Source: Selaginella moellendorffii (taxonomy: Eukaryota > Plantae > Lycopodiophyta). From it: a DNA stretch of 64,000 bases. The stretch lies in NCBI RefSeq assembly GCF_000143415.4, contig NW_003314404.1, forward strand, positions 124,001 through 188,000. Reading direction: 5' to 3'. A program made the position numbers and the translations under genes. The notes under the pieces are model-generated. The model did not search any database. It worked only from the letters and a program-made list of their open reading frames with translations, and had not been told where the DNA came from. Positions 12,395-49,703 of the stretch are shown here, piece after piece (position 1 is the first letter of the stretch; each line of letters begins with the position of its first letter).

Positions 12395-12406
12395 AATTTA
12401 GGGTTT
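12395..12406. promoter_or_regulatory. Telo-box upstream of KRI1
   Basis: TTTAGGGTTT 11 nt before the ATG. Similar motifs lie near the starts of the PPR gene (9245-9261), NUF2 (~19673), the kinase (~51578) and PRMT6 (~62678). Confidence 0.6.
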
Positions 12407-12417
12407 TTCTAGGGCAT

Positions 12418-19662: not shown

Positions 19663-19809
19663 GGAAGAGCATAAACCCTAGAAAACAATTTGGCGGGAAG
19701 AGTTTAAACTCTATACACGTTGCCCGCCATGCTGGGTGCCACGCGATCACATTGACCCTAGCAGTGTGCTCGTTGACTAAATTGACCAGGCGCGTTGACT
19801 GGCACCGTA

Positions 19810-22078: not shown

Positions 22079-22257
22079 CTCTCGCCCTAATTTCAAACCA
22101 GGAAGATGCAACAAAATTAGTGCAAGAGAATCGAACTGCAGACTCTTCGTCACATGATTATTTTATTTCTTGAATACTGATGCAAAGCCGCGAAGATCAC
22201 TTACATTTGTTTGGCAGTTCTAGCTGAAACTGAATTCACTTCGGCGTAGCGCACAAC

Positions 22258-22417
22258 GAGAACCTGGTAAAGCCGTCTAGGGAGATCATCTGGCCGCTGT
22301 ACGAGAATCTGGTGCAATACCTTGTGAGAATCCCCAGGTAAGCGATGGAATCCATTCGTTCTCCATGGGTGAGCGTCTTTCTCGTCTTAGGAATGAGCTC
22401 CAGCAGCCCGTTCTTGG
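22258..22417 (+). pseudogene. NUF2 fragment (end of exon 1, intron 1, start of exon 2)
   Basis: Inverted near-identical copy of about 19411-19566. Confidence 0.9.
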
Positions 22418-23892
22418 TGCAAGCCGCGAAGTTCACTTGCTAGCGTGTGGCGCAATTATCATTGGACATTCGTTTGGCAGTTCTAGCTGAAACTGAATTC
22501 ACTTCGGCGTAGCTCACAACAAAGTATGTTTTACGTTTTGAGGGACTAAGAGATTCCGGCCTTGTGTAGATGCTTGCGAAGCTCTCGAGTGGAATGCACA
22601 AGCCTGCTCAACAAACGTTAGTCCCGTCTTCAGCGGTTGAATCCTTACTCGCAACCTTGCTTATAAGTAAAATGTAGCTCTCTTGATTACTTTTTTCTTT
22701 TGTTTATACAAGTATGGATCTTGTGTTCAGCGGAAAACTAGGAGGCAAGCTTGGACAAGAACTTGAAGGGGAGCTTGGAGTAAAAACGGTTGGAGGTCTC
22801 TTGCAGTTTTCCGAAGTGAAATTGCAGGATATGTATGGGCCAAACACTGGGTAAGGAACTTTACTCCGAGTTTATCGAGCCTCTAACTCATCTTCTTTCG
22901 CGGTAGGACTTGGCTGTGGAATACTTCTCGCGGCATAAACGGGGACGAGGTTCAAGATCGAACGCTTCCAAAAAGTCACAGCAGCGGTAAAACGTTTCCA
23001 GGTCCTCAAGCGTTGAAAACACTTGAGACTCTAAGGTTAGTTTTCTGACTACGCATGGATTAACAGAGCGACATTTCTCTTACAGGTTGTATATTGGCTT
23101 AAGGAGCTAGCAGAAACTCTCCAACTTCGTTTGGACGAAGATCTTTCACAAAACAATCGTACTGCACAGCATCTTCTCACAATTCATGCGAGCTGTCACA
23201 TTGTAAGTCTCAGCTAAAATTTTGTGTCTTGGTCCTTACTTATCGTTCCCTTTGTTTCAGGAAAGTCGTGCCACGGAGGCTCCAAAGTTCTCCTCAAAGT
23301 CGCGGCCTTTAAGATATGGCGTAGACAAGATCGTAGAGGACAGCCGATACCTCTTCGAGTGAAGCTTGCACGAGTTTTGCTCTCACCAGTCAGCTGGAAA
23401 GGAGCAAAGTGAGATAACCAGCAGCTGGGCAGTGACAGGACTTTCTCTTACTGCATCAAATATCATGGCGAAGCCGATGGTAAAGACGTGATCTTTTCAA
23501 ACCATTAGTAAGCATGTTGTTTGCTCTTTCCAGGGAGTGAATCCAATCACTCAGTACGTTGACACAAGGCCTCCAGTAACAGGAGACCCTGGGAACGCCA
23601 GTGAGCAACAACAACAGTGCCCAGTGATCTTCAAGGAGGTACATCTTGAGGAAGACAGGGCTGGCGCTAGTGTTCCCGTGGTGTTCCCACAGACGGCTCC
23701 CTTCCGGAATCCATCTCACCACCACCGTCAAGAAAACCAGCGAAGCTCACAGATCTCTGGCAGAGAAAAACATCACTCCAACCGGAAGAAACCGTGGTTT
23801 GGGAGTATAAGCAGGAAGAGATCGATCCCAGCGTGTTTGCAGAGCTTCCTTCTGAAATCCAGCAAGAATTACAGGGTAGACTGTCCAAAGAA
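22418..23892 (+). pseudogene. 5'-truncated inverted duplicate of POLH with introns retained
   Basis: Reverse complement of about 19862-21346 with small indels and premature stops. Confidence 0.93.
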
Positions 23893-23984
23893 AACTAGTG
23901 AATGTTTTACCGCTGCTTCGACAACTGTACCTAGCCTTTTAAACCGGATATCTTAGGTCAGGTCAGTTTGTAGGGGCGAGCGCA

Positions 23985-28989: not shown

Positions 28990-30482
28990 GAAACTTGCTA
29001 TGTCGATGGAGTGTCCTGCCCGGGCCATCTCTGCCAAGAGGCTCTTGTAGCAACGCGAGCTCAACCTCAAACCCACCTCCCTACATTTGATGTAGAGCGC
29101 ATAAATCCTTTCCACCATGCCTCTGCGGCCAAAAGCTTCAACTACGGACTGAAATGCTGGGGGCTCCACGAAACTGCCATCCTTGCGGTCGATCACTCGT
29201 CCCAAATAGTCCATGATCTCTTCCAGCCGGCCACTCTTCCAGCCGGCCACTCTGTGCGTACACCTCTACAACGTAGCTCTGGAACGCCCACGTCGACGCA
29301 ATCTCTGGAGTCGTCTCCACAAACTCGATAAGCTTCTCTATCCCTTCCACGGTTGCAGTCCTGCTGTGAGCCTTAGCGGCCTCCTCAACCGCCGGAACCG
29401 CGATGTTGTGCGGCAGCTGGGAGTTCTCCGCTCGCATCTCGCCAAGAACCTGGTGGAACCTGTCCAGCGCGTCCAGGCGAGCGTAGCCGATGAGCAGCGC
29501 TGCAAAAGTCTCCGAGCTGCGCTTGAAACCTCTGCAAACCTGCTCCATCTCCTGGTACGTGCTCTCGAACCGGTCCCTGCGTCCCATTTTTGCGTAGGCG
29601 TGCAAGAGCGTGTTGAAAGTTATTGCGTCCGGCAAGACCCCGGCATCCCGGCACTCCCTGACCATGACCTCGAGGCCTTGCCAGTTGTGGTAGTGCGCAA
29701 ACATGGCGGTGAGGATGTGGCACGTCATGGCGTTTGGCGGGCACTCGCGGGAGAACTCCTTCATACCGTGGAAGATTTGCATGGCACTGTCGAGGTCCCT
29801 GGCCTTGGCGTATGCAATGATGAGAGCATTGCAGCACTCGCTTGATTTCTTCCCTTCGATCATCACGTTGCCAAACCATCTCCGTGCCAGGATTGTGTGG
29901 CCGACCACGCCGGCATAGGAGATCATCATCGCGTAGAGCCGGTCGAGCTCCATCACCGTCGCGGACTTTAGAACAGCCTGATTTGTTAGTTTCATCCAGG
30001 TGAAGATCTAGGAACAAACTTATTAGACCGGAGAACAAAGATTAAAAACTTGAGAAGAATTGTTCTACCTCGAGCGTATGGTGGTGCACTGGACCGGCCA
30101 TTAGATCGCGCACCAGTGGCATCCAGAAGGCCCCAAAGTCTCTCACATTCTTATGCTTGGCGAGGACGGTCTGAATATCTTTCCCATTTTCTATTTGGAT
30201 CCGGACGATCTGCGCGGCACGGCCTGGATATGGCCTCTTGTTACCCCGGACTCCAGCAAGTGTGGATCCACCGGTGGAGGTGGCTGGAGTGGATCCCTGC
30301 TGCTCCAACCCCACAATGAATTCGAGGTAAGGAGCATCACTCCATGCATCGACATCATAATCCTGAGGTTTGACAGCCAGATCGGGCATTCTTGCGATCT
30401 TACCGATTCCACGGGATAGAACCGCTGGAGGTCTGAAAATCCTGCCAAGCACGCGGAGAAGCGCTCTGCCATCGCTCGCCAT
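28990..30482 (-). pseudogene. Paralog of the P-class PPR gene at 7418-9229, frameshifted and 3'-fused to unrelated sequence
   Basis: Same two-exon layout and near-identical peptide. A short duplication near 29220-29250 shifts the frame. Confidence 0.9.
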
Positions 30483-30904
30483 CGCTCGCCATCGCCATTC
30501 GTGAATTTGAGAACCCTCGCATCAAGATCAATCACCACCGTTAGGTCCGACGTTTTAAAACTAGCCGTCGATTCGCCACGGCTAGGGTTTTCACGCTGGT
30601 TCAGGCGCGAAAACTCTTTGACTAGCGATGGAGCTGGATCGCGCGAAGCTCCTGTTTGCTCACCCCCCACGACGCTGTGGATCCGTGCTTGTAAGTTATC
30701 AGAGAGCAGCTCCAGAGATGCCATCGCCGGGGAATTCTGCCACGGTCAACGCGGGACTGACTTTGAGGAATCCTCTCCTTCCAAGAATAATTGCCCGGTC
30801 TTTGTGTCGATCAATGCCAGTAGACAGAGGATCTGCGACGCGATCGATATTTTCCCGGTTGTAGATTCCATGACACCGAAGAAGGGCTTGTGGAAATTTA
30901 GGGA

Positions 30905-31735
30905 AAATCAAGAGTTTCGAAAGCGCGGGATTGTGGACACGGATTCGATGGAGGACCGAGGTACGAATTTTAGCCACGCTAAGAAGCAGGACCCAGCATT
31001 TACAAGCCAGAGGTGAAGTGTCATGAAGACGAACGACGAGGAAGGGAATGCTTCGGGTGAGTGGAAAAAACCAATGTCCTTGTGGCCAAACAAGCTCTGG
31101 AAAACTCTGAGGAGCGATCAAGACCAGCGAGATTTAGGCTCAAGAACAGTGGAAACTTTGATGCGCTTTGCTGCTGCGGTCGAGGACGACGATGACGACT
31201 CTTCGAAGAAGAGCAACGAGGAACCGAGGCGTGAGGAAGAGGAGAGAACCTGAGGAAGCACCTGTTTCTCAAAGGTTCGAGGAGTACTCTGGGAAGGACG
31301 ATTATCCGGGCGAGAATGATAAGCCTATCTCCAGAACCAGGGTCTTACGGGGATGTGAGTGGAGTTGTCGAAGATCCAAACTGTTGACGAGGGTGATCTA
31401 GAGGATGACTTCGATTCCGACGAGCACGATAGGAGCTCTTCGGTAAGGACTACTACAACGAAGAGGATTCAGAGTTCAGTCTGGTGACAGTGAAGCAGCA
31501 GGCTGGATTACGATGACGACGTTCTGGGGATAGAGAAGAGTGACGACGAATAGTAAAGAGGTGCCAACGCGGTTGAAGTGTTTGCAGATATTGGATGCGG
31601 ACGAGAAGGAGCTCAAACAGTACGTGTCATTGAAGGCAATGGCACCATACAGGACGGAGGAGTGGTGCCGATGCTCCTGTTCTAGGGAACACATGAAGAT
31701 CAAGAAAAGGAAGAAGCAGCAGCAGGAAGAACCGT
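30905..31735 (+). pseudogene. KRI1 pseudogene, heavily deleted
   Basis: Collinear pieces of 12545-13997 (e.g. ILDADEKELKQYVSLKAMAPYRTEEW) compressed to about 0.8 kb. Confidence 0.92.
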
Positions 31736-31763: not shown

Positions 31764-32240
31764 GATGCCACTGGCGAGGCGCCGCGCACGTCGATCTCGA
31801 CTGCTTCTACATCCAAGGTGTGGGAATCGAGAGCCCTGATGCTCAATCTATCGAGACGAAGTAAATCCAAGAGGAAGTGCAAGAATTCGACGGTTCTTCC
31901 ATTTCCAGGTGGTTGCTACGAAGTCCTTGACATTACCGAGGCTGCCGAGAGACGATTTGTCGACGCTCGTGAGCGAGGAAGCATCGAAGTCCCATATTGT
32001 TGGGACTTCCCCAGGACCTGTCTTGGTTTATGACTTGGCCGCTATAGGAGCTTGGCACGGAAGAATGGTTTTCTAGGCCTGATGGAAGCCGCGAAGATCG
32101 TTTGCTAGCGTTTGGCACAATTATCGTTCCGGACATTCGTTTGGCCGTTCTAATTCACTTGTTCAGCCGGTGTATCTCACAACAAAGTATCTTTAACGTT
32201 TGAGACTAACACATTCTTGCGAAACACTCCAGTGGAATGC
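31764..32240 (+). pseudogene. POLH pseudogene, part 1 (start codon to ...SSGM)
   Basis: ATGCCACTGGCGAGGCGCC...CACGTCGATCTCGACTGCTTCTAC through ...AGTGGAATGC, collinear with 22078-21158 with deletions. Confidence 0.9.
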
Positions 32241-32277
32241 TACAAAAAGTCATTTCCTATATTTGAAATATATTGAG

Positions 32278-32915
32278 GAAATTGCGAATGAAGGCATTGA
32301 AGAACCTGTGAGTGATTCGAAGAAAAGAGTGAGATTTTTATGATTCGATTTGTGCAGACAAAGTCGGAGTTGATCGAAGGCGTATGGAGATTAATTAATG
32401 TACACAACAAGGCCCAGCACTGCATGCCCGATTCAAGTTAAAACTTCTACTACAAACATTCATTTTATTCACCGCCTTGACTTTTTTGTAGAGGACTATT
32501 GTGGGAGTTTTCCAGGACATCAAACTCAGCGATCGCAGCGACCAGAGGGTGTCAAACATTGTAAAGTTTTCCGAGAAAATTAAGCAAACATAGTTTGCTT
32601 GTTTCTTTAACTTTGGAGAAATCTTCCAGGACGAAGCTAGGTCTAAAAGGATCAGCTTTCGTTTCGACCGGGCCGCATTCTCTTTCTCGTTCCTTCCATT
32701 CAAAGTTCCATACCAGGCGACGAGGCCAAAGGATGGGTCGACCGACACAACTTATCTCTCTCCCTCTGGAAATGTTCGAATCTCAAGAGGCAAAAAAGTA
32801 CACAACTAGACAGTATATCACTATCTCATTGATGCCAGGGGCCAACTTTTGTCCTGAAAAAGACCTTGGACCCTCGGCAGCGGCTGCTTGCAGCTATGTC
32901 CTCCAAAAAAGACGT
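32278..32915 (+). pseudogene. Fibrillin / plastid-lipid-associated protein (FBN10/PAP12-like), exon 2 onward
   Basis: SELIEGVWRL.MYTTRPSTACPIQ|RTIVG, DQRVSNIVKFSE, FRFDRAAFSFSFLPFKVPY, DTTYLSPSGNVRISRG, YVLQK. Confidence 0.85.
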
Positions 32916-32959
32916 CGCAAAGCTCTAAGAACCTTAGGCTTCAAGAGGAAGTGAAACCA

Positions 32960-34845
32960 AATTCTCGGCAGCTGGGATGCTCAGTGCTTCTTAACGTCCA
33001 ATCCCAGCGGCAGGCTGGCGGCGAGCTCCTCGCCGCAGCCCAAGACCCCCGATCCGGCAAGGGCGTCGATGACCGCTCCATAGTCGTGCTCCGCCACTAT
33101 GAGTAAGCCTCCCGCAAGAGCCAAGCGTTGAGAATGCCCAGGAATGTGATGCTGTCCAGCGCGAAGCCCTGGAGCTGCATCAGTCGGGTGGTTTGGTGGC
33201 TTGGTTACAGCGCCCAGATCGAGCATAGGCTGTGATCATGGAGCTCCAGGACACGGGATCCCTGTCGGGGATCATTGCAAATACCTTTGCTGAGTTTTCG
33301 AGACTCCCGTTATCGGCGTAAGCTGCGACCAGCGAGCTCCAGGATCCCACATTACGGTAGGCTATTGCGTCGAGCGTCTGCAGCTTTTGGAGTAAACGGT
33401 CAAGAGTGCATTGCAGGAAACCACGAAGAACACCTGCATGGCTGCCTCGAGATGGAAGTGTTGGCCGTAGGCCGAGATCAAGGCCGAGCAGGCCACCGTT
33501 TTCCATTCAGGCATCCGGTCAAACAGGCACTTAGCATCTTCCGCACACGCGGTTACCATGGCGCTCCAGCACACGATGTCTTCGCGGGAGAGGAATCACA
33601 TACTTTTTGCGCTCCCTGCAAGCCCCCAGCCTCGCCAAATGCTTTCATCATTGACGTTAAAGAAACCACGTCCATCTCTGGCATGGATTTAAAGCATATT
33701 TGAGCCCCGGCACAATGCCCCGCTACAGCATTTCCAGCTATCATTGTGTTCCACGCTGAAACATCTCCGTAATGGCATGCAGAAAAACAAATCGCGAGTC
33801 TCTGCCAGCTTTTTGAACAATGTGTACGCTTGTAAAAGAGTATTCCAGCTGGCCACGCTACGTACGGGCATCACATTAAACAAGGCAATTGAAACGTCAA
33901 AATGCCCTGCTTGGGCATTTGCTAAGAGGACAGTAGTCCACGAAACGACGCCCCTCTCCTCCGGCATCACTGCCATAGCTTCGCGAAGGTTAGCGAGCTG
34001 GAAATGCCCACGCAGGATTGTGTTCCAAACACCTCTCTTGCGTCCGGTAAAATGCATGCCGCGATGAAAAGCTTCCACGAGAAAACATTGGGATGTTTGA
34101 TGGCCCCAAAAGCCTTGCACGCAAGCTCCAAGTTTCCAGGCTTCCCATACCTGTGAATCAGCAAGTTGGAGCGATATCTCGCCCTCGAATCGTCGAGCAG
34201 CAGGGCAATCCAGTTCTTAGAGCTAGAGCAACCATCGCCTCATCGCAAACTCTCAGCCAACCTTGTCCTCCTCTTCGAAAAGACCATACTTTCCTGGTTG
34301 CTCCATCTTTCATCGCATACATGTTCGCAAGGAGGTCATGGGCGGCACCACCCAAGAGAGTCTTAGCTGCGTGAGCACCATGTTCCAAATTGCTATAGCT
34401 CGTCGATGCACCCAGCAAACAATCGCCAGTCCATGGAGCTTGTTTGCAACGATCCCATGCGAAGCAACGCAAGCCATCCCAAACTTATCCAGTGCGTCCA
34501 CACACGAGAAGAACCAACGTGGAGCCCGGTCTCTCCTCTTCAACCTTGATCGCACCATACACATCCAGCGCGTTTGAAAATGCCCATTATGCGCATAAGC
34601 CGAAATCATGGCGTCCCAGGCAATCGGATCTTTATCTGGGCTTTGATCAAGGATTTTCTTGGAGTGTGTAGCACGACCGTAACCTGTTAGTATGGTGGTT
34701 ACTGCAACCAAGCCCTGCACAGGCATTGTATCAAACAGAAGCTTGGTATGTTCCAGATGCCCGCTTTGGGCACTTGCTGAGAGGATTGAGTTCCAGGAAA
34801 TAACATCATGCCAAGCCTCATCAAGATGCGCATTCCAGCTCACAT
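32960..34845 (-). pseudogene. PLS-class PPR pseudogene
   Basis: Repeated DVISWNSIL, GVVSWTTVL and DPVSWSSMITAYA motifs, plus LLIHRYGKPG, across frameshifted ORFs. Confidence 0.88.
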
Positions 34846-35215
34846 TGCTCCTCCACGTCCCCCGCGGACCACATCCGCCGGACTGCTGCTGCTGGCTCGT
34901 GGACGACGACGATACAACTTAGTTTAACATAAAACATACTTCACTGGTTATGGTCAACCTTGATACGAGAGTCTTTCCACAAGTAACAGATAGAAAAGAA
35001 GCTCAAAGTCTGAATAATTAAAGCTGATGAAAAGTATTGTTGAGACGTAGCCTCAATTTCACATAGCGAATTTGCAGAGCCTAGCAAAAGCAGCTCTTCC
35101 ATTAATCTAGAAGTCCAAAATTTACATATATATCCGTCGTTGTTCAGTCTGACCAAAAAATCGTCACTAACTATCAGTAGCTATCGTAGCGTAAACCAGC
35201 CACATACCATTCCAA

Positions 35216-36137
35216 CTACCCATACTTCCCCACCGCCAAGAGTCGCCCTGGGTATTTTGTTCGGTACCAGCTCTTCTTGTCCGCCTCAAGAAAGTGTAGC
35301 GTGGCGTCATCCACGGGCAGCCCCACCACAGCACCATCTTTCTCCGTCTTGACAACAATCCCACTCACCCTCAGGCTCCTTGAACGTGAATCCCATTCAA
35401 CGATAACATCACCCACTTGGACACCAGGGACGATGCCAGCCACTTCATCTGGTAAGTAGTGCTTCTTGAGGATTGCAGGGAGTTCAACTTCCCCAGCCCG
35501 CCGCACAAAAACCACCTCTTCATTTCGAGGCAGACCAACCATAAGAGGCACCTTAGGAGGTAGTTCCAACTGAATCAGAAAAACACCCGATCAGGATGAA
35601 TCAGGGTATTGAAGCAGTAGCTTACCGGTTCGAAGAGCTCAACAGCAGCCACCCAAGGCTGCCTGCGAAACAGGGAAACAACCTCACCTTTCACAGTCTG
35701 CCCATTGATCGTCACAGTAACTTCTCCACCTTCCTTCCACACCATGGTCTCCTTGTAACCCACGACGATGCACGTTGGCTGTGGGCTTAACGCTAGAGTC
35801 GCAGGTGGAGTTCCGATGAAAAGAGCGACCCCTTTATCGCTACAGGTGCCCACAAACTGCAGCAGCTTCAAAGCGCCATGAGGAGGCTTCACACGAGGAG
35901 GATTCGCAGGAGGAGGAGGGTTTGGAGCCGTCCTCGGAGAGGAGGCCTTCATAAGCGCCTCAAGTTGCTAACCAAAGATGTCATTTCCAATCCACGCTAT
36001 TTACTTACCTCAAGTCTCCTCCGCATGTCATCCAGCTGCTCCTGGAGCTCTTCCTTCTTCTTGCTCTTACTCCGCCCAAACAGCTTCTTCTCGGCTGCAC
36101 TTATCTTGCTCTTACACCGGGCTACCAGCCTCTCCAT
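35216..36137 (-). pseudogene. Hypothetical gene (coiled coil, Pro-rich linker, beta-rich domain), probably frameshifted near 35572
   Basis: Three consecutive minus-strand ORFs, with a short GT-AG intron after RRRLE. Family not recognised. Confidence 0.5.
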
Positions 36138-36259
36138 CTCCACAGAAACCAAAACCCTACCAAAATTCGAAACTTTAGGGCAGAATGACAAAGTTTACGA
36201 GGAAAAGCTCCATTTGGACCAGAGGTATCGATTGATGCTTTTGCCCGAAAAAGTGTGGT

Positions 36260-38198
36260 GAGTGATCTGAGAGGAAGAAGGTGCGCGGGGTGAGGCCGGA
36301 TCTGGATGTGAATGCTGCTGTGTGTGGAGGGGAAGCAGGAGTTGGTCCCGATTCTTTGGACGATTTTGATGATGACGCTTTCGAGGAGATTGATAGGCTT
36401 TGACGCGATGGAGGTTCTGCAGCAGACATGCCAACGTATCTCCGGAAGCTCAATGTGTCCCAAAGGGATGCAGCGCTACTTCTGATTGTTGCGGGGCCGC
36501 GAAGTGGAAAGGTACACACTTTTTTTTTTTTTTTCTTCATTGCTAGTTTTTCTGACTACTTCGATTCGTTTATCAGACCTCTACAATGGTCGCACGTATT
36601 CTGACACTGTTAAACGAGGTATGCAGTGCAGTGCAGTCCTCTCTCTCTCTCGCCCTCTTTTGTTGCAAAGCTCAAGGGTTCGGCACAGGGGGTAGACTCC
36701 AAGAACAATGACCTTCACAACAGCTGCTGCAACGGAGATGATGGACCGCGTCGCTGCTGTGGTGGGGAAGGAGGCGTCCAAGGAACTTATGATCTCGATG
36801 TTTCATTCCTTTTGTTTGCAACTCTGTCGCTCTCATGCGGAGAAGTAAGCTGTTCCCTAATGGTAAAAGCGTGCAGTGTACTGCAACATCCTTCTTTCAC
36901 ACAGCGTTAGCGGAATGTCACAACACTTGGGCATATGTACTCGTTGACGAATTCCAAGATACGAGTGTGATGCAGTACAAGCTTTTGCGGCTTCTTTCTC
37001 TGCACGGGAGGGTCACTGTGGTTGGGTCGGATATCACCAGGTACGTTCTGCTAATATTTAACTTTTGCTAGTCCGTTTTCAGCTTCAATGGTGCCAACTC
37101 TCTCGGTTTTTCCACATTCCGGAATGACGTTCCAAACTACAAAGAGGTCTGAAAACCTGAAATAAATAACGTAGTCATGTGAGTTGTTGTCTGCGTGCTT
37201 AGGTGAGACCACAACAAAATTATCGCTCGACTGGCTGCATTGTAGAAGCAGTGAGATGTTCAACATAATGATTCAGGCTGCAGTGCTAAAGTTGTGCGAA
37301 TGGATAACGATTTTGGAGAAAAGGTATCAGGAATTCAGAACATATATATTTTTGGTTCTCCAGACAGTTGTTATGGAGTGCCGAAATGAAGAAGCACAGT
37401 GCACATTTGTGGTCGATGAAATCCTGGAAATGGCATCAGTGGCCAGTGACATCAAGCCGGTGTTTGCAAACTTTGCTATACTCTACAGGCAACAGGTGTG
37501 TATTTGATTTCGTCATTTTCTCTTGTAGGTCACAGGCAAAATATTTCAATCTGCTTTCCGTAGTCGAAAGATTCCGTTCAATATGCATGGAGTAGCAGTC
37601 TACTGCAAGAAGGTTTCATGCTCGCTTTTCTTTTCTAGTTGGCTGACTTTCATTGCATATTGTAGGTGGTTAAAGACGTGATTGCTTTATTGTGGACATC
37701 CTTAGGAAGAAGTGGGACCGTGTTTGAAAGAAGAGTATTTAAGGCGTTATATCGTGGTGATAAAACGGAAAAAAGGAAGGTATGATATCTGTTTTGTGTC
37801 TTATACAGACATTGGGAATTTTCAGGCAGTGAAGTATGTTGCAAAAAATGAAATTTGTAGTTTTCTTGAAGCAGCAGAGATTATTTTTACGGCAAAAGTT
37901 TCGGGTGCCTTTAGCATTATAGATGCGTGGCCAAGGCCGTAAAAATCAGATTTTACGATGAATTGCATTTTGAACCAGGAACAATCTTTGTCGAGCCTAG
38001 TGACCGCTGTATTGAATATGCTATCTCAGGTAAGAGTAAGTTTCTCTACAAGATGCTTATCCTGTTATGCAGAGATGCTCTTTTGAATCTCGTGAACGAG
38101 GATGAAGATTGTCGGACTGTGAGCAAACATTCTTCTTCGAAATATGTCTAACTTGTGTTGGACTCCAGGTGTTGGACTATCTTTTGGATGATATTTCC
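36260..38198 (+). pseudogene. SRS2-like UvrD helicase pseudogene, 3'-truncated
   Basis: LLIVAGPRSGK|TSTMVARI (altered Walker A), TFTTAAATEMMDRV, VLVDEFQDTSVMQY, FSFNGAN, AILYRQQ, with introns and deletions. Confidence 0.9.
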
Positions 38199-38214
38199 CA
38201 GGAAACTAAGATCT

Positions 38215-38829
38215 CGTGCTATACCAGAGAATGGAAGACGAGCTAAATTGGCGGAGGCGCGAGCCAAAGCGGAGGCCGAAGAGCGGCAGAGACAACTTCG
38301 GGAGCAGGCAGAGGCCGAAGCCAACAAAGCGCTGGAAGAGGCGAAGGATGCCGCTGCTCTCGCCAACGAGCTGGAGGAAGAGGGAAAGGAGCTGGCTAAA
38401 CAGGAAGCACAGGCGGTTGCCAACCCTCAAAAGGCCAAAGACAAAGCCAAGGCTGCGGCAGCGTCGCTGGAAGTTCTGGGGGCAAAGATGAAGGATATTG
38501 GAGCTTCCATCAGCGAGACATCGCAGAATGGCTTGGGTGGTTTCTTCAAGCGAGGCACAGTGGCTGCCGAGAAAGAAGAAGAGAGTCAGGAGGAGGAAGA
38601 AGAAGTGAAGGCAAAGTTTGGTCTGGGAAACTTGTTTAAGAGGAGCAAGGCCACAGTATCACTCCATCGCAAGCAAAGAAAGTTCCTTCTACCAAAACGA
38701 AGACCCCAAGTCACGATTGCCACCACCGCCAGCGATGAGGACGAAGGCTCCGAGAGAGACGAGCAAGGCCCAAAGCTCGAGAGGAAAGAAGAGTACTGGG
38801 AGGATTGTTCAAGCTATATATATCGATGA
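38215..38829 (+). pseudogene. 3' fragment of a pTAC16-like plastid protein gene
   Basis: AIPENGRR...A.AEE followed by an A/E/K-rich coiled coil, as in the pTAC16 C-terminus. The 5' part is absent. Confidence 0.65.
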
Positions 38830-38931
38830 GTAACTCGATAGTATATTGTACAAACCATGATATCGTTTGTAAAGCAATCAAAAGGAGGTATTTTGCGTTG
38901 TATGCTTTTGTGCAGGAAGTTGCTTGCTGCT

Positions 38932-39150
38932 ATGACGCAAAGTGGTGTGCGCGGGATTGAGAGAGCAAGGCTGTGGAGAGATGGAGGAGGAGTTTGTGCT
39001 TTGAAGAATCAACCATGGCCATTGTCTCGTTTGAGAAGATTTAAGATTTCTTTGGTAGTAGCAGCAGCAGCTACTGGCGAGGAGGTCCTGATTGATGCGT
39101 TGGTTGGAGTTGGAGGGCGACGCCGGAGTGCAAGCCAAGAACAACTCAAG
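38932..39150 (+). pseudogene. Fibrillin (FBN10/PAP12-like) exon 1
   Basis: Transit-like peptide, then EEVLIDALVGVGGRRRSASQEQLK followed by a GT donor. Confidence 0.82.
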
Positions 39151-39167
39151 GTGATTTAAATCATTGT

Positions 39168-39410
39168 ACAAACCTTCTCAACAGACGTTAGTCCGTTGAA
39201 TCTTTACTCACAACCTTGCCTATAAGTAAAATGTATCTCATGTTGGTTTTGTTTTTCTTTTGTTTATATGTGTATGGATCTTAGGGGGCAAGCTTGGACA
39301 AGAACTTGAAGGTCTTGGAGTAAAAACGGTTGGAGATCTCTTGCAGTTTTCCGAAGTGAAATTGCAGGATATGTATGGCCCAAACACCGGGTAAGAAGCT
39401 TTATTCTGAG
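39168..39410 (+). pseudogene. POLH pseudogene, part 2
   Basis: KPSQQTLV...GGKLGQELEG-LGVKTVGDLLQFSEVKLQDMYGPNTG; resumes exactly where part 1 stops. Confidence 0.92.
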
Positions 39411-40105
39411 CTCTCTTCTTCAGCTTCTTCAGCTTCTTCTTCTTCCTCAGCAGCAGCATTAGGGTTCCAGCAGCATCAGCAGCATCAGCAAGTGCAGGAG
39501 TACGCGGCTCTGCTGCAGTCGTGCGTTGATGGGGGCAACCTCCTCCACCGGAGCATTGTCGCCAAGGATCTGGAGCAGCACGTCTCTCTCTGGAATTGCC
39601 TGGTAAACATGTACGTCCGGTGTGGGGATGTGCAGGTGGCGCACGCTGTGTTCGACAGGATGCAGAAGAGGAATATGGTGTCTTGGGCTGCCATGATCGC
39701 AGCAAATGCCCAGCACGGGCATTGGGTTCAGGCATTCCGACTGTTCCGGATGCGGGGCCCAACAGCCACACATTTGTGGCGCTGCTCAGCGCTGCTGTCT
39801 CCAAAACAGCAAATGGATCGAGTCGCTCATCCGTGAGAAAGAAGCTGGCATGGAAGAAGCCGGAGTCAGAGAAGAACCAACATCAACAACAACAACAACG
39901 GTGGTCGCAAGTGCCCTCATCAACATGTACACCAAGTGTGGCAGCCTGGAGAATGCAGTTGCTGTGTTTCAAGGGATGGCTTGCCAACAAAAGGATATTG
40001 TGTCTTGGACTTCACTTGTAGGAGCGTATGCCCAGCAAGGCCATTCTGTTGGTGCTGCAGTTCACTTTCAGCGCATGTTGCTTCAAGGCCTCATGCACAA
40101 CGAGG
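39411..40105 (+). pseudogene. PLS-class PPR fragment
   Basis: YAALLQSC, NCLVNMYVRCG, NMVSWAAMIAA, SALINMYTKCGSLENA. Confidence 0.88.
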
Positions 40106-41047
40106 ATTTCTGGCCGTGTGTGGGGATAAGATTCCACACACCATGTTGGGGAAGAATTGGGGCATTGGTTGCAGCGGGGATTTGCTGCGGTGGTCTGCCA
40201 GGTGAAATATGGTGCTGACCGTGTGATTATCTGTCTCCTGTGTTATGCTGTGGGGTCTGAGAATCCAAAGAACAGTGGGAATTGTGGGGGGGGGGGCAAT
40301 TGTAACTACCCTTGAAAGAGGAAATTGGTATACAGATTAAGCACATCTCCTGTCCAACACAATATCCCACCCCCTTTCCCGGGCCTTATCCAGATTCAAA
40401 ACGACCACATGGTCCCAGGTTTTCCAATACCGGATGCTATGCCCATGCCGCTTGTTGTATCAAGGTGATGCCGACATAATGGAGCAAGATCTCAACGTCC
40501 GAAGGTATTTGTTTTCATTTACTAGGATGCCATTCACTATAACATGTGTATAGGAATTTTTTCGTTGCCAATGGAGATGGTCTTCTGAAGGGTGTTGTAG
40601 ACAATGCTGCCGAGAACAGCTAGATATTTGTCACAGTTACGGAGCAGCCAAAACAGAAATATTCTCCAAGTGGCACAGAAAATGTGTCTCAGGAAAGGCC
40701 CCGGTTAACCCCCTCTTAGTCATTAGGATTAGTGCCTTCAGCCATGTGACTTTTCAATCTTTGGCTCCACCATTGGCGCTAGCATTGCTATCATCCTGCT
40801 ATTTTCTTCACTTTTACTAGTAGCTCTGCTCACATGTGCATACAAAGCTCTTGCAGAAACAAAGAAAGCTGAACAATTGCTAGGAATAATGTTCACTTTA
40901 ATAACCACCAGGTGCTTGACTTATGCATAGTAAACCACCTCCACATTGTGAAGGTTCTTGTTGAAAGTGTTAAACATGATTTTGATTCTACTTGAGTTTG
41001 TGTTTCATGTGTCTTCAACTTACATTTCTTGTTTGTGGTTGTTTGGA

Positions 41048-41195
41048 AAGTACTACACAATGATGAGGGGGCCTAAAAGGCTTGGAGTTACATTACATGG
41101 CCAGAATGCAAAGACTAGGTAAATGATTTTAAAGGTGCACAATACAAAAGATTCAACAGTTTGAAAGAGGCAAAGCTTTTCATTAATGAGGAAGA
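41048..41195 (+). pseudogene. Degenerate RNase H1 N-terminal / caulimovirus viroplasmin (hybrid-binding) domain
   Basis: KYYTMMRG...GV..TWPECKD*VNDFKGAQYKRFNSLKEAKLF. Confidence 0.8.
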
Positions 41196-41359
41196 AACAT
41201 GTTTTAAAGTTGTGGGCCAAATAGGGTGGTGGGAAGACCCCAAGTACTATGTCTGCATTGCCAGGTTTGTTGAGGGCCACAGCCAGGCCTCTTGAGGAAG
41301 TAGTAGTTAGTGCATCATAGGAAGAACAAAAATACATTCTAACAAATGACTGAGTTTAG

Positions 41360-43830
41360 AGTGTGAAATAATTGTATAAGAAAAATGTGAATAATGTGTG
41401 AGAGATGTAAGAAATAAAACATGTAGGAAATAGAATCTTAACTTATAAAAAATATAAGTGAAATAGTGTGTGAAATATGAATGTTATTATGTGAAATAAC
41501 ATGAATAACATGTGAAGTAATATGCAAATGTTTTTAGCTGTCTTTGAAATTTGTGTGAAGTATTCCATGTCAGAATATGTATGTGTTTACATATGTAAAA
41601 TCATATATAAATGTTACTAAATATGTAAGTTTCTATATAAAGTGGAAATCAATGTGTAATCAATTTAAAATTGACTATGCATCCACTGTACATAAAAATT
41701 ACAGATAGTTCACATATATTTTTTGTAACTCATAATGGTTTGATGCTCTGATTATAAAAAAAACTCTTGAGTAAATGAGATAAAAAAGAACAAAAAAAAA
41801 AAAAAACTGCAAAATGTGATCTAAATCATCCTATAAAGAACTTTTTTTAAACAAAAAGAAGAATAAAGAGAAAATGAATATAATGATGGTAATTTGATGC
41901 AACAAGTTTGATGTTTCTTCAGAGCCATGTGCATTATGTTCACTGATTATAGTAGTTTTGGTCCCAGTATTGAGATGTGACTTTTGAACAACAGCGGTTT
42001 CTTTGTCATTCATTAATGATACTCTGGTTTTATATGATTAAATTGTTAAGTACTACAGTTACATTGTCAACATTATCATATATGAGACTTGTACGTCCAT
42101 GACATATTCAATGGTAGCAATTCTCCTATCCATCTCTAGAAAGCAAAAGTGAAAACTACCAAAACACTTAACAACATTATGTGTGGGCAAAAAATGTATT
42201 TGTTTCTATGAACAAATTTGAGCAAGATATCCAGCAAACACCAAAAATAATAAATACTACTATGCAAAGGCCTTTTAGCTTCAAATTAAGAACATGATGC
42301 GCCATCTCTCGATTTCTTTAGTGTGAAAACTTCACTTACATAAATTGTATAAAAAAGAATGAAATTTTTATGTGGGATGTAAGAAATAAAACGTGTAATA
42401 TAAAAATGTTTTTAAGAAAAAAGTGAAATAGTGAGTAAAATGTAAATGTTTTTATGTGAAATAACATTAATAACATGTGAAGTAATATGCAAATGTTTTT
42501 AATTGTCTTTGACATTTGTGTGAAATATTCTATGTGAGAATATAAGTGTTTATATATGTGTAATAATATATAAATACTACGTATCACTAAATCTATAAGT
42601 TTTTATTTAAAGTGGATAGGCATTCACTTTACATAAAAATTACAGATAGTGCACATATAATTTTTGTAACTCATAATGGTTTGATACCCTGATTATAAAA
42701 AAACTCTTGAGTAAATGAGATAAAAAAGAACAAAAAAAAAAAAAAACTGCAAAATGTGACATAAATCATACTGTAAAGAACTTTCTTTAAACAAAAAAAA
42801 AGAATAAAGAGAAAATGAACATAGTGATGGTAATTTGATGCAACAAGTTTGATGTTTTTTCAGAGCCACATGTATTATGTTCACCAACTATAGTAGTTTT
42901 CATCCCAGTACTGAGGTGTGACTTTTGAACAACAGTGGTTTCTTTGTCATTCATTAATGGTACTTTGGTTTTATGTGATTAGATTGTCAAGTACTATAGT
43001 TACATTGTCAACATTATCATATATGAGACTTGTACATCCATGAAATATTCAAAACATATAAATGTTTTAGATTGTCTTCATGCTCTATTCAATGGTAGCA
43101 ATTCTCCTATCCATTTCTAAAAAGCAAAAGTGAAAACTACCAAAACACCTAACAACATTATGTGTGGGCAAAAAATGTACTCGTTTTTGTGAACAAGTTT
43201 GAACAAAATATCTAGTAAACACCAAAAATAATAAATATTGCTATGCAAAGGTCCTTTAGCTTCAAATTGAGAACAGTATGCACCACCTTTCGATTTCTTT
43301 CAGTGTGAAAACTTAACTTACATAAATTGTATAAAAAAGAATGTGAAATATATATGTGGGATGTAAAAATAAAACGTGTAATATAAAAATCTGTTAAAAA
43401 AAAGTGAAATAGTGTTTAAAATGTAAATGTTTTTATGTTAAATAAAATTAATAACATGTGAAGGAATATGCAAATGTTTTTAGTTGTCTTTGACATTTGT
43501 GTGAAATATTCCATGTGAAAATATAAGTGTTTACATATGTGCAATAATATATAAATACTACGTATCACTAAATCTATAAGTTTTTATATAAAGTGGATAG
43601 GCATCCATTTTACATAAAAATTACAGATAGTTCACATATAGGTTTTGTAACTCATGATGGTTTGATACCCTGATTATAAAAAAAACTCTTGAGTAAATGA
43701 GATAAAAAAGAATAAGAAAAGAAAGAAACTGCAAAATGTGATCTAAATCATCTTGTAAAGAACTATTCTTAAACAAAAAGAAGAATATAGAAAAAGTGAA
43801 AATGATTTGATGCAAGAAGTTTGATGTTTC
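41360..43830. repeat. AT-rich tandem repeat, about 0.95-0.98 kb unit, about 2.5 copies
   Basis: TACAGATAGT.CACATAT recurs at about 41700, 42641 and 43622. AAAAACTCTTGAGTAAATGAGATAAAAAAG occurs three times. Confidence 0.9.
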
Positions 43831-44194
43831 TTTGTTAACAAGACAATTAAACAACTTTTATGTTTTGATGGATAAAAACAATTCAATAGTCAACTTCATT
43901 TCTGCCAGCACACCAAAAACAATTAATTAGTTAGAGCCTAATACTAAGCTGGTTTAGTATTTGCTGGACATACAGCACAGCATGCGTTGCCCATTATTTA
44001 AGGAGCGAGCGTAGCTACAGGGCTCATTCACAAAATAGCTTGTAAGTTCTATGTTTCCTTGTTCTTCTTCTTTTTTGGACTGGCTACATTGGTAGGTGTT
44101 ATTTCTCACATATGTGTCCAATCTCTCATCTTTTAACTTCTGTTGAACAGGCAACTCTTGGGCATGCTCGAACAACTCCTGGTTTTGATGCTTG

Positions 44195-44670
44195 CAGGAA
44201 TTGAACTTCTATGGGCAGATCATTCTGGAAGGGGAAAGATCATGCAGAACGAGCATTTCAAAGGATGGAAAAACTTATGCATTCAGCTGCAAGCTCACCA
44301 CTGGTACTGACTACGACTCATCTCAGATTGGAGTTATAGAAGGCATACATTCAAAACATATGAATGCTTTAGATTGGTTTCAAGGGTGGTTTATGAATCT
44401 GGGAGTACTCGTGACTTTATCACTGATACTTTCACCATCGAGCTGAAGGATGGACCAGAGCTATTCACCTTCAACTCCAAAGGTGTTATTAATATTCAGA
44501 AAGCAAAGAACATGTTTCCAGTGAACGGTGGTATTTTTGGGGAGGACACAATCGTCGGCAGGTTTGTGCAAGAAGTGATTTATTCTCCTCCAAGTCTTTT
44601 GTTGAAGATCACTGCTACTCTCTACATCATGCCTTACTCATGTGGCTCAATCTCCATGAAGGTTGAGTAA
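44195..44670 (+). CDS. Dirigent / allene-oxide-cyclase-like beta-barrel protein; gene or pseudogene, 5' exons uncertain
   Basis: ELNFYGQ, IGVIEG, FTIEL...FTFNSKG, PVNGG resemble the dirigent-type pattern. Confidence 0.4.
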
Positions 44671-45395
44671 AATGCGCATGCTGCCCCCTATCCTTGCAGA
44701 TCCAATCTCAATAGAGATTGAGATAATAATAAGTCTTCACCAGTAAGTGTTCAAGTGTGAGCATTGGATAGATAGCATGAAAATATGCCAAACGCATTCT
44801 AGTCCCACTGGTAGACTCTTGCCCGAATCACAAATGCGGCAACCTCACAGTTGAGTATCCATTCTACATTGCAATTCGGCAGCAGCAGCTCACGGATCAC
44901 GATGCATGCAGCTCAGCCGGCTCCACTGCGAGCACAACATGACGCTCAGGCTGCCGCTGCATTCGCTACGAAGTCCTCAACTTCACCAGCCGGAATGTGA
45001 TCACCATCGATCCGCGCAGCTGCGACAGCAGCAGGAACTGATCCTCCACAACTTCTGCGGCCAGCTTCACGCTGCAGAATGATCCAAACTACGCCCTCTC
45101 CTACGGGAATATCCTCATGCTCTACAGCTGAAGCAACACCGCCGGATGCTTTAACAACTGGAGAGCCGCACAATCCACAGGCATGCGGACCACATGGAAA
45201 AAATTTCAGCACGGACGTCCAGCACATACTACCACCTGTCTTAAGCTCGCCTTTATTTTCAGTTGTCTTGTTGACATCAAAAAATTGAGCAAAGATATTG
45301 TGTGCAAATTTCTGTGGTGATGAGTCAATGGCTGAGCGCCCAAAGAAGCGATCAGATAATATTGAAGCCAGGATGTGGTTGTGGACCATGTGGTT

Positions 45396-46066
45396 ACAAA
45401 ACAATCGCACTGCGCATCTTCTCACAATTCATGTCACATTGTAAGTCCCAGCTAAACTTTTGTGTCATGGTCCTTACTTATCACTCACTGGAGGCTCCAA
45501 AGTTCTCCTCAAAGTTGCGGCCTTTAAGATATGGCGTAGACAAGATCGTAGACAGCCGATACCTCTTCGAGCGAAGCTTGCACAAGTTTTTCTCTCACCA
45601 CTCAGTTGGAAAGGAGCAAAGCGAGATAACCAGCAGCGCAGGAGTATCTGTTACTACCTCAAATATCATGGCAAAGCCGATGGTACGATTTTTTCAAACC
45701 ATTAGTAAGGATGTTGTTTGCTCTTTCCAGGGAGTGAATCCAATCACTCAGTGGCCTCCAGTAACAGGAGACCCTAGAAACGCCAGTGAGCAGCAACAAC
45801 AGTGCCCATCGATCTCCAAGGAGGTACGTCTTGAGGAAGACAGGGCTGGCGCTAGTGTTCCCACAGACGGCTCCATTCCGGAATCCCAACCGGAGAGGAA
45901 GGAAGAAACCGTGGCTTGGGAGTATAAGCAGGAAGAGGTCGATCACAGCGTGTTTGCAGAGCTTCCCTCTGAAATCCAGCAAGAATTACAGGGTAGAATG
46001 GGTGTCCAAAGCAACAAGCGAGGAAAGCCGACAACGATAGCGGGTTTTTTAAGCTCGAAAACGTGA
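45396..46066 (+). pseudogene. POLH pseudogene, part 3 (3' end)
   Basis: Inverted copy of about 19810-20606, ending EEVDHSVFAELPSEIQQEL...TIAGFLSSKT*. Confidence 0.93.
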
Positions 46067-46193
46067 TACAGTGCTAGTCAACGCGCTTGGTCAATTTAGT
46101 CAACGAGCACACTGCTAGAGTCAATGTGATCGCGGCGGACGTGTATACAGTTTATCTTCCCATCAAATTGTTTTCTAGAGTTTATGCTCCTCC

Positions 46194-48176
46194 ATGGCCG
46201 GGTCACGCAACACTTACTCCTTGAGCGGAAGGAGATCCTCAAGTGCCTGGCGCAGATCGGCGTGACCGACCTCTCGGAGGAGAATCTGGTAAAGCCGTCT
46301 AGGGAGATCATCTGGCCGCTGTACGAGAATCTGGTGCAATACCTTGCGGGAATCCCCAGGTAAGCGATGGATTCCATTCATTCTCCACGTGTGAGCGTCT
46401 TTCTCGTCTTAGGAATGAGCTCCAATCATATTTCGTTTACGAAACCCGCAACCTCTCTCAACCCTCAATCCTGACCGGAAGAACGATTGGAAAAAGCAAT
46501 TGCATGGACCCTATCGCGGGGAGGAAGTGGATGCAAAGAGCGTTGCTGCCACCAAACATGACTGACAGCAGCCCGTTCTTGGCGCCTTGGATTGCTGCGG
46601 CATCAGGAGCTCTATGCTGATTCAGTCGGGACTCTGGCGTCGTTTCGTGCGATTTCCAAGCTCATGCATGCCGTTGGTGTGGATGATTTCGGAACCAGGG
46701 ATATTTTCAGGCGGGAGCCGACTAGAACAGTGATCAACTTTGCGTACTTCGGGTGTGGCGTCTTTCTTCTTTTTTGTTTGATCACAAAGACTGCTAACTA
46801 CTTTTGATTTTGCATGGAGCGGAGAGGGAACTTCCAGATACCGAGACGACAGAATCCAGCAATTGGAAGAAACCAGGATACAGGTGAGAAGGCTGCTTTC
46901 TTTCCGTGTTAAGATGGACAAGAACATGCTAATCTCTTCATCTTTAGCTTCAAAACGCAATTGCTCAAGACGAGGCGGAGCGAAAGCTGAGGAGCCTCAA
47001 GTCCAGAAATTGCCCGTGGAGGCGAAAGAACTGGAGCAGAAAATCTACGATCTCAACAAACAACAAGCCGTGTTGCAAAGCGACATACGTGGCATCAAAG
47101 AGGAGCTGAATTGTGGAGTGTTTTTTCTTCTTCTTAAACAGTGAGATGTTGGTGTGTATTTAGATTGTAAGCGAGAAAGCCTCTGTTTCTCAAATGAAAC
47201 AAGAAGGGTTCCAGCTGCGGACACAGATTGTACAATCTCCCGACAAGCTTCGGGTAAGCTCTGAAATTCTATATTCTACTTTTCCTTTTTTCTTGTTCTT
47301 TTCGGTCTAACGTTGCGCTCCCTTTCCAGAAAATGCTTGAAGACAGGAGGGCGGCTGTTCAGAATGCGGAAGCTGAGGTTGAATCGGCCCGTCAATCCGT
47401 CGAGGAAGCACAAGTACGAGGCATACACAAAAGTGCGTTAATTTTTTTTTTAATATTTTTTTTGTCTTTCCTTGGCCGAGCAAAACTTATATCATGTTGC
47501 AACCTCTTAGGCGAAAAGGAAAGTGCAAAAATGCCTTGATATGATGGACTCGCTGAACAAGCAGGTAATTTCGTTACTCTCGCTCGACTAGCACGACGGA
47601 TTGACTTGTTTTGCTGTACAGGCGGCTCTTCAGAAGAAAATGGTGAAAGATTCGAAGGAGATGAAGGTGAAACTTAAAGAGAATGAAGAGAAGCATTCGG
47701 TTATCAGTGTGCAGCTGGCTCTTGGTATTCACATGTGATACTAACTCAAGTATCTTTCAGGCCAGCACTTTCACAATCTACTGGAGAAGCTAGATTCGTC
47801 CTTCGACGTCAAGTGCCAGGAGACGGTCAAGGAGCTTGAAGATTTCAGGTTGCAAAATGCGCCCCTGATTGATCAACTGGATAAACAGGAAGAGAAAATC
47901 GCGAGAAAGCAAGACGAGGTACGAACGCTTAATTTGGTTTGTTCTTCAGATTCAAATTCTTTTGCAGGTGGAAATTATCACAAGTAACTTAAACGAGGCT
48001 CGGTCGAAGAAAGAAGCCGGGCTCAAGGCCTTTCACGACGAAGTGGAGCTGATACAAAACGAGGTAATGGACAAGGCTTATATTTGTGGGTCTAAGGCGC
48101 CAATTTTCAGGTCCTGAGATACAACGAGGACTCGATGAGAGTGATTGAGTCCTCCAGTGGACGTTTCATACAATGA
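46194..48176 (+). pseudogene. NUF2 pseudogene (full-length inverted duplicate with deletions and a ~140-bp insertion)
   Basis: Collinear reverse complement of 17740-19662. Frameshifting deletions; foreign sequence at about 46425-46565. Confidence 0.93.
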
Positions 48177-49703
48177 CTTACCCACAGTATGACGCGCGGT
48201 ACCGGCGCACGGAGGCGTTCCAGCTATGCGTTCACGTTGACTATTTTGACCGGACGGTTGGAATGCGCTGACCAAATGTTTTTAAGCGCCATTTACAGAA
48301 AATGTTTAAAAAGTAGCTCTATAGTTGCGAGCCAAAACGAAAAGGATTCGGTATGGAGATTTGTTTACCAGTGTCACGTTTTAAGCACATTCTCAATCTA
48401 ACTCCATCCATATCGCGAAATAGCCCCTCTTGCAATCCTTGTCTGCGCTTTGATTCTTCTCCCAGATCCATCTCTTGCTCTTAGAAGTGCCCCCATGGAT
48501 TGTGCCTCACAACTTGAGCGATTGGAAATCATAAACCACAGGACATGCTGCAATTACGTTCGATTCCTCAGTGCTCGTTGATGATTAGTCATCACGAGCC
48601 TTGGGAAAGTCTTCAAAGTCTGTAAAATTCAATGCGTAAAGCTGTGATGGCGATAATATATTTCCTTTTATAAATCCATAGAAGCTTTTGCAGTTTTTTG
48701 TCTAGGCAATATTTATCAATCAATCAATCAATCATTCACGCATTCTTGATCCAGTTCCATCCATCTCGCAAATGGCCCTTCTTGATTTTCCAAATCCATC
48801 TCTTGCTCCAACAGGATTGTGCCTCACAACTTGAGCGATTTCCCAGGAATCGATGCTGCGATTACATTTGGGAGAACAGGATTTCCTCATGAAGGAGCTT
48901 CCCGAGATCCGGGCTTGCGCATTGCCGGATGCGTAGGTCTCAAAATCTGGCTTGCTGCAGGAATCCCTCCAACAGAGCAGGAATGCATATAAAAAAGCCT
49001 GGTTCTCAAGCACAAAGATCGGATATATTCTTGCATATTTAAGATTAATATTAAAGTAATACATTTTGGAAATTATTTGCAGATTCTATGCATCAAACGA
49101 ACAAGTGATTTCACATGAGCATTATATAGTTACACGTATATTTTGGTTTTGAATTGCACACAATGTTATAATGTATACAATCATGTTTTGATTGTTATAA
49201 TAGCAATTGAAATGTGATTATATGCATAATAATGGCTTGGGAATGAGTAAATATGTTTAGGATTATAAAATTTATTATCACAATTGGATGGAATTTTTTT
49301 TTAATATTTCATTCAACATGCTGTTAAGCAATAAGATCATGCGCTCCAACTAATTTAACATGGCATATGAAACCACAAATTTTAATCCACTAATAATTTT
49401 ATCCAAAACTTGGTTGATGCCACAAAATTTTACTCTCTTAGATTAAACGTTTGCTCAAGTTGAGCAATATGTATAACACTTGTGATTCTTACATAGAGAT
49501 TAATAAGACCCCATTAGACTAAATAGTGTGGAGGTTTATGGCCATATTTAATTACACTTTCACAATCATCCTTGTTATTTTTGCCAAACTTAAATGAAAA
49601 AGAAGAATTTAAATTTTTTTTTACTAAATTATTTTGTGAGTCATACATGTCATAAAGAATTCAAACACATATAGTTTTTAAATTTATATATCTTCGACAC
49701 TTT

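What the first reader, a model, noticed from the sequence alone, without database searches (positions are those of the whole stretch)
32241..39167. 6.9-kb circularly permuted insert inside a POLH copy: footprint of an integrated extrachromosomal circle
Seen: removing 32241-39167 rejoins the POLH copy with no gap (GGAATGC|ACAAACCTTCTCAACAG = G-M-H-K-P-S-Q-Q; intact gene GGAATGCACAAGCCTGCTCAACAA). Joining the two ends of the insert rebuilds a fibrillin gene: exon 1 and its GT donor sit at the right end (38932-39166), while the rest of intron 1 and exon 2 onward sit at the left end. The rebuilt intron is about 53 nt, a size typical for this window (acceptor reads GAG). Both junctions share TACAAA. 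Inference: a DNA circle carrying about five host genes, with no transposase or terminal repeats seen, integrated by one reciprocal microhomology crossover.
Basis: partly seen in the sequence, partly recalled or inferred. Interest (0 to 1): 0.9.

Follow-up and report, generated by a model that had tools for sequence, protein, structure and literature searches.

The report
Two-donor DNA circle inserted in spikemoss
In the spikemoss Selaginella moellendorffii, a dead copy of a DNA-polymerase gene is split by a block of host genes whose order is rotated twice, the footprint of a DNA ring built from two separate loci and pasted back into a chromosome; this route is documented in yeast and animals, and my literature search found no base-resolved plant case.

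Summary
The insert is real. The window is S. moellendorffii scaffold GL377708.1. Removing 32241-39167 rejoins a decayed POLH copy without a gap. Both junctions recur to the base on the other haplotype scaffold, and the right one is spanned in two independent sequencing samples. Donor-derived contigs show the fibrillin intron 1 and mRNA running from the insert's right end into its left end, so the permutation holds.

SRS2 is permuted too: 38197 and 32926 abut in the full-length gene, with 12 nt lost. The pTAC16-fibrillin piece therefore sits inside SRS2 and comes from a second donor, absent from the SRS2 donor region I fetched. The predicted single donor order and the closure at SRS2/pTAC16 are refuted. 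The unit was at least 11.25 kb; the window lost 4.3 kb holding the likely closure. The other haplotype carries two head-to-tail copies. One extra T departs from a clean reciprocal crossover.

Best reading (0.75): a two-donor circle integrated by end joining. The mechanism is known from cattle, yeast, tilapia and human. The scan noted similar permuted inserts elsewhere in this genome before (unchecked here).

The parts
31784..32240 (+). Host: 5' part of a decayed POLH (DNA polymerase eta) duplicate
   Evidence: about 9.6% substitutions and many short deletions versus copy B; POLH-Rev1_HhH on a sister copy
32241..32246 (+). Left junction, TACAAA (6-nt end redundancy of the opened donor)
   Evidence: same bases on GL377576.1
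32241..32925 (+). Piece b: rest of fibrillin (FBN10-like) intron 1, exon 2 from 32278, decayed exons, cut in coding sequence at 32925
   Evidence: PAP_fibrillin E=0.0038, below the cut-off; subfamily name from my own knowledge
32926..32994 (+). Piece d (stub): 3' continuation of SRS2, resuming 12 nt after 38197
   Evidence: full-length SRS2 in L008; run X2 loose end at 38197
32994..32995 (.). Site of a 4,325-nt deletion (SRS2 3' end, Gly/Pro-rich gene G, candidate closure, protease-like gene X, TPR-like piece), kept in the second copy on the other haplotype
32995..34917 (-). Piece c: PPR pseudogene fragments
   Evidence: Pfam PPR; same order in the donor region L002
35216..36191 (-). Piece c: lineage-specific unknown gene (SELMODRAFT_431023, 267 aa, three open exons), the only cargo gene that looks intact
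36211..38197 (+). Piece c: 5' part of an SRS2-like UvrD helicase
   Evidence: Pfam UvrD-helicase; 5.0% diverged from full-length SRS2 in L008
38198..38215 (+). Filler letters at the SRS2-to-pTAC16 join
   Evidence: identical in both copies of the other haplotype
38216..38829 (+). Piece a: 3' part of a pTAC16-like gene, cut in coding sequence
   Evidence: an intact transcript continues upstream (run X6 loose end at 38216); name from my own knowledge, not confirmed by tools
38932..39167 (+). Piece a: fibrillin exon 1 (to 39150) and start of intron 1 (GT at 39151)
39167..39172 (+). Right junction, TACAAA (T from the donor, ACAA shared with POLH)
39168..39410 (+). Host: POLH copy resumes
45396..46066 (+). 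Remainder of the same POLH copy after a second, unrelated 6-kb interruption; NUF2 follows

Best explanation
A composite DNA circle was integrated into a POLH duplicate. Step 1 (junctions shown, order inferred): a linear piece of about 1.7 kb from the pTAC16-fibrillin locus (a+b) was captured in a break in a copy of SRS2, with 12 nt lost and a short filler. Step 2 (inferred): a segment of at least 11.25 kb carrying X - TPR-like piece - PPR - unknown gene - SRS2[a+b] - G closed into a ring. The candidate closure lies where G is cut, at about GL377576.1:1,591,160. Steps 1 and 2 may have happened off the chromosome in either order. Step 3 (junctions shown, chemistry inferred): the ring was opened in fibrillin intron 1 with a staggered break leaving TACAAA on both ends, and joined into a POLH break by end joining, using ACAA microhomology on the right. 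The product is POLH5' - b - d - c - a - POLH3'. Later events: a second head-to-tail copy on one haplotype, a 4.3-kb deletion, and decay by small deletions. No element-encoded enzyme is involved; it is a repair accident and probably has no function.
For: Three genes are each cut once, with both ends kept in the product: POLH 0 nt lost, fibrillin intron in register with the donor, SRS2 12 nt lost. All four pieces keep their orientation in nested, rotated order. The donor order is shown for the SRS2 segment. It is also shown for pTAC16-fibrillin: run contigs across that stretch carry non-insert bases at 16 of 16 diagnostic sites where both haplotypes of the insert agree. Both SRS2 halves are equally diverged from the full-length gene (5.0% and 4.9%), as expected of one event. 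No TIR and no Helitron ends. Rotated order is the published diagnostic for circle-mediated duplication (PMC7188851). Multi-fragment circles are reported in rice (table in PMC12975422).
Against: No circle was observed; the evidence is the footprint alone. The closure is only a candidate: the origin of the 0.4-kb piece Y beside it was not traced, and the donor region is a tandem cluster, so the join could be an older tandem junction. The genomic pTAC16-fibrillin donor was not fetched; only short run contigs and 30-letter loose ends were seen, with 20/30 intron identity. No chromosomal SRS2 copy carrying a+b outside this locus was found. The surplus T does not fit a perfectly reciprocal crossover unless the host already had it.
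Confidence: 0.75

Rival explanations
1. No free circle: the composite unit was first amplified head to tail (tandem array or concatemer), and a linear piece cut at the same fragile intron site in two copies was inserted.
For: The other haplotype holds two head-to-tail copies. The donor region is a tandem cluster. Tandem duplication plus trimming is the known false positive for this signature (PMC7188851).
Against: It needs two cuts within 6 nt of the same position in an 11-kb unit. No array of the composite unit was seen outside the POLH site in eight other loci or the window.
Confidence: 0.1
2. Replicative template switching (FoSTeS/MMBIR-like chain of templated insertions) copied b, d, c and a in turn during repair of the POLH break.
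For: Short microhomology and filler at the joins; two donors.
Against: Copying would have to restart twice exactly where another segment ends (within 6 and 12 nt) and keep one orientation throughout. Template switching does not predict that (own knowledge).
Confidence: 0.08
3. One reading: one contiguous donor pTAC16-FBN10-PPR-unknown-SRS2, closed at SRS2/pTAC16, 6.9 kb.
For: The fibrillin permutation and the pTAC16-fibrillin adjacency are right.
Against: SRS2's continuation follows the fibrillin piece directly. There is no fibrillin or pTAC16 in L002, L003, L004, L006, L008 or L009. A further 4.3 kb is kept on the other haplotype.
Confidence: 0.03
4. Gene capture by a transposon (Helitron or Pack-type element).
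For: The cargo is fragments of several unlinked genes, as in such elements (own knowledge).
Against: The ends read TACA...TTGT in a C|A site, with no TC/CTRR termini on either strand. TIR identity is at most 12/30. The ends are host intron sequence.
Confidence: 0.03
5. Assembly artefact.
For: Repetitive, heterozygous region; no run holds more than 45% of the stretch's sampled words.
Against: Both junctions are on a second scaffold that differs by 1-2%. The right junction is spanned in two independent samples.
Confidence: 0.01

Closest known systems
[quoted passage not shown]
   Same: Rotated order of a duplicated block in a recipient site; no TE machinery.
   Different: They kept 3 circle cases, found from dot plots. 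Here the block is gene-rich, built from two donors, and each end is read to the base.
Cattle KIT serial translocation via circular intermediates (Durkin 2012, as described in PMC3420103)
   Same: Circle opened away from its closure; the second circle carried sequence from two loci.
   Different: About 500 kb, repatriated by homologous recombination, with a phenotype. Here about 11 kb, end joining into a new site, no known phenotype.
Nile tilapia vasa duplication (PMC3245284) and the yeast 15-kb five-ORF cluster (Borneman 2011, as cited there)
   Same: Similar size (28 and 15 kb), intron-bearing genes, new location.
   Different: One donor segment each, as described; no nested permutation reported.
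Plant eccDNA: Amaranthus EPSPS replicon, chimeric circles in Arabidopsis, multi-fragment circles in rice (PMC12975422, PMC10462705)
   Same: Circles made of fragments from different loci occur in plants.
   Different: Those are free circles. A 2025 perspective cites germline reintegration only for animals (PMC12722694), and the Arabidopsis paper cites yeast, cattle and cancer cells.

Membership tests
eccDNA-mediated (circular-intermediate) duplication | Recipient site rejoins when the insert is removed | tested here: met
eccDNA-mediated (circular-intermediate) duplication | The two ends of the insert are contiguous in the donor | tested here: met
   donor intron 14/18 in register, donor mRNA joins 39150 to 32278
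eccDNA-mediated (circular-intermediate) duplication | Rotated order in the same orientation relative to the donor | tested here: met
   nested, for two donors
eccDNA-mediated (circular-intermediate) duplication | A closure junction joining the donor's outer ends | tested here: inconclusive
   candidate at about GL377576.1:1,591,160, deleted in the window; neighbouring piece Y not traced
eccDNA-mediated (circular-intermediate) duplication | Not a tandem duplication trimmed by deletions | tested here: inconclusive
   no flanking repeat of the unit in the window, but a dimer on the other haplotype and a tandem donor cluster
eccDNA-mediated (circular-intermediate) duplication | Junctions present in independent sequence data | tested here: met
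eccDNA-mediated (circular-intermediate) duplication | The circle itself observed | not testable with these tools
   old event, about 5% divergence from the donor
Helitron | 5' TC and 3' CTRR termini, insertion between A and T | tested here: not met
Pack-type TIR transposon | Terminal inverted repeats with a target-site duplication | tested here: not met
   at most 12/30 identity between ends; the TACAAA repeat is donor intron sequence
Retrocopy or LTR-mediated duplication | Intron loss, poly-A tail or LTRs | tested here: not met
   introns kept; no long direct repeat at the ends

The most novel reading that the evidence does not exclude
S. moellendorffii routinely moves and shuffles host genes through multi-fragment DNA circles that are captured at chromosome breaks, sometimes as head-to-tail dimers. 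That would make circle reintegration a major TE-independent source of gene duplication in a land plant. This locus would be a worked example, and the scan's other permuted inserts the rest of the set.
Probability: 0.35. Interest if true: 0.75.

Novelty: new member of a known kind. Interest (0 to 1): 0.5.

Why it matters
Reintegration of gene-bearing circles into the heritable genome is cited for yeast and animals, while plant work has mostly shown free circles (PMC12722694, PMC10462705). This locus gives a plant case with donor evidence at base level and with circle cargo from two loci. With the scan's other candidates it makes a genome-wide count of circle-mediated duplications in one plant a direct computation. 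The locus itself is mostly pseudogenes, and no phenotype is implied.

Tried and rejected
Finding the genomic pTAC16-fibrillin donor by protein search failed. The exon 1 ORF gave no hit and the pTAC16 piece none at E<=1e-10, both limited by the tool's length window. Atlas and NCBIfam did not name the pTAC16 piece, so that name and 'FBN10' rest on my own knowledge. P0001 led back to the window's own locus; P0009 could not be located; one search failed on a wrong frame. Read laying was given 1,801 letters around the right junction, so the left junction was not tested on runs and no record could span both ends. The diverged SRS2 copies next to the unknown gene in L002 and L006 were first taken as the donor; the 3' half is closer to the full-length SRS2 (4.9% versus 13.7%). 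Two separate circles integrating one inside the other was rejected, because the second would have to hit the first one's closure exactly. Two independent deletions trimming a dimer was rejected for the same reason. Literature searches found no paper with both Selaginella and extrachromosomal circles and no plant permuted-duplication case; the library lacks most subscription papers.

Full report
Source. The unknown gene in the insert is SELMODRAFT_431023. Its locus L001 is 100% identical to window 25216-46137, so the window is Selaginella moellendorffii scaffold GL377708.1 (window position + 124,000). The insert is GL377708.1:156,241-163,167.

Observation. Joining 32240 to 39168 gives a POLH copy that aligns without a gap at the join to copy B at 20884-22036. 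The copy is decayed: 9.6% substitutions and many short deletions. The junctions are GGAATGC|TACAAAAAG and ATCATTGT|ACAAACC. A strictly reciprocal crossover at ACAAA would not leave the T on the left, so either the host already had that T or the donor was opened with a 6-nt stagger.

Not an artefact. A protein walk reached the matching region on GL377576.1, 1-2% diverged in flanks and insert. It has both junctions at the same bases. Contigs of two independent samples span the right junction: X3 record 22, 38919-39253, 0 differences, and X1 record 7, 39072-39224, 5 differences.

The fibrillin permutation. A DNA-run contig leaves the window at 39154 with 30 listed letters of the donor intron. They align without a gap to the rebuilt intron (20/30). 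The part from the junction on matches the insert's left end at 14/18 in register 0, against 4-10 at other offsets, and only 2 of 128,002 window positions score as well. A contig from a probable RNA run leaves at the exon 1 donor site and continues with letters whose only 12/13 match is at 32278. Contigs running from pTAC16 into fibrillin exon 1 differ from both haplotypes of the insert at 16 of 16 diagnostic sites, so they come from the intact donor and the adjacency is native.

The 69 nt at 32926-32994 are SRS2. In the full-length SRS2 on GL377675.1, the letters of window 38197 and 32926 are 12 nt apart in one exon, and run X2 shows the same continuation. The pTAC16 3' part plus the first part of the fibrillin gene therefore lies inside a broken SRS2, and SRS2 is rotated as well. 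The SRS2 donor region reads X - TPR-like piece - PPR - unknown gene - SRS2 - G, and none of six loci from it holds fibrillin or pTAC16 sequence. On GL377576.1 that region lies about 0.4 Mb from the insertion. Both SRS2 halves are about 5% diverged from the full-length gene, against 1-3% between haplotypes, so the event is older than the haplotype split.

Size and later history. The other haplotype keeps 4,325 nt that the window lost at 32994|32995: the SRS2 3' end, gene G cut at its 5' side, an untraced piece Y, gene X and a TPR-like piece. One unit is thus at least 11,252 nt. The candidate closure is the G|Y join; it is inferred, because Y's home was not found. That haplotype carries two head-to-tail copies (17.7 kb). 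The window shares the deletion with copy 1 and its right part with copy 2, which suggests collapse of a dimer, but phase switches in the assembly could give the same pattern.

Mechanism. Write the first donor as a|b (cut in fibrillin intron 1) and the second as c|d (cut in SRS2). The product is POLH5' - b - d - c - a - POLH3'. Shown: four of the five joins in the window, the candidate fifth on the other haplotype, and the donor contiguity of a|b, c|d and the host. Inferred: a+b was captured in an SRS2 break, the composite closed into a ring, and the ring was opened in the intron and end-joined into POLH. I put this at 0.75. A linear piece cut twice at the same site from a tandem array gets 0.10 and template switching 0.08. 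The single-donor circle is refuted. Transposon capture fails on termini.

Comparison with what is known. It works like, and meets the main tested features of, eccDNA-mediated duplication as defined in PMC7188851, with precedents in cattle, yeast and tilapia. Two features stay inconclusive: the closure and the exclusion of a tandem precursor. Chimeric and multi-fragment circles are known in plants as free molecules, and a 2025 perspective cites germline reintegration only for animals. My searches found no plant case of a permuted host-gene duplication, but the library omits most subscription journals, so that is weak evidence of novelty.

Scan context. Earlier notes list many other permuted inserts in this genome (44 notes fit the words, some of them transposons). 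They are unchecked leads, not support. Note s1-394766, which placed the closure at SRS2/pTAC16, is contradicted here.

Verdict. A real feature and a new member of a known kind, with an unusual nested two-donor layout and a dimeric allele. Interest 0.5. It would deserve about 0.75 if a genome-wide count shows that circle capture is a routine source of duplication in this plant (probability 0.35).

Noticed in passing
GL377576.1:1,582,920-1,600,608 (L005 + L007): The other haplotype's insert is 17.7 kb: two head-to-tail copies joined at window-equivalent 38491 to 32363 with a 5-nt filler. This fits either a dimeric circle with a deletion of about 0.8 kb at the join or a later tandem duplication. 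The window matches copy 1 at the 4.3-kb deletion and copy 2 from 36000 onward (71 versus 2 sites), as if the dimer collapsed; assembly phase switches could mimic this.
   Followed up: partly
window 39411-45395: A second, 6-kb interruption of the same POLH copy (PPR fragment, three AT-rich repeats of about 980 nt at 41370-43832), replacing roughly 0.3 kb of POLH. No sign of permutation in the letters checked.
   Followed up: partly
window 16944-23893 and 45396-48948: Three to four POLH/NUF2 copies in inverted and fold-back arrangement (19862-21346 versus 22418-23893 at 93%).
   Followed up: no
window 35216-36191; P0001, P0008-P0017: An unknown gene family of about 270 aa with no Pfam match. All close relatives found are S. 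moellendorffii, clustered on GL377576.1 and GL377675.1, and this copy kept its reading frame inside a decayed insert.
   Followed up: partly
window 7617-13998 versus 29015-31734: A direct duplicate block (PPR and neighbours) just upstream of the host, eroded by many short deletions; 9420-9623 and 10264-10467 form an inverted repeat.
   Followed up: no
window 38511-39058, run X6 record 28: One donor-type contig of a probable RNA run spans from pTAC16 coding sequence into fibrillin exon 1, suggesting overlapping or read-through transcripts at the intact locus; contigs cannot prove one transcript.
   Followed up: no
L002, L006, L008 (GL377576.1 about 1.19-1.21 Mb; GL377675.1 about 374-398 kb): The SRS2 donor region holds one full-length SRS2 and one or two deleted copies in tandem, interspersed with DUF7722 genes.
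   Followed up: partly
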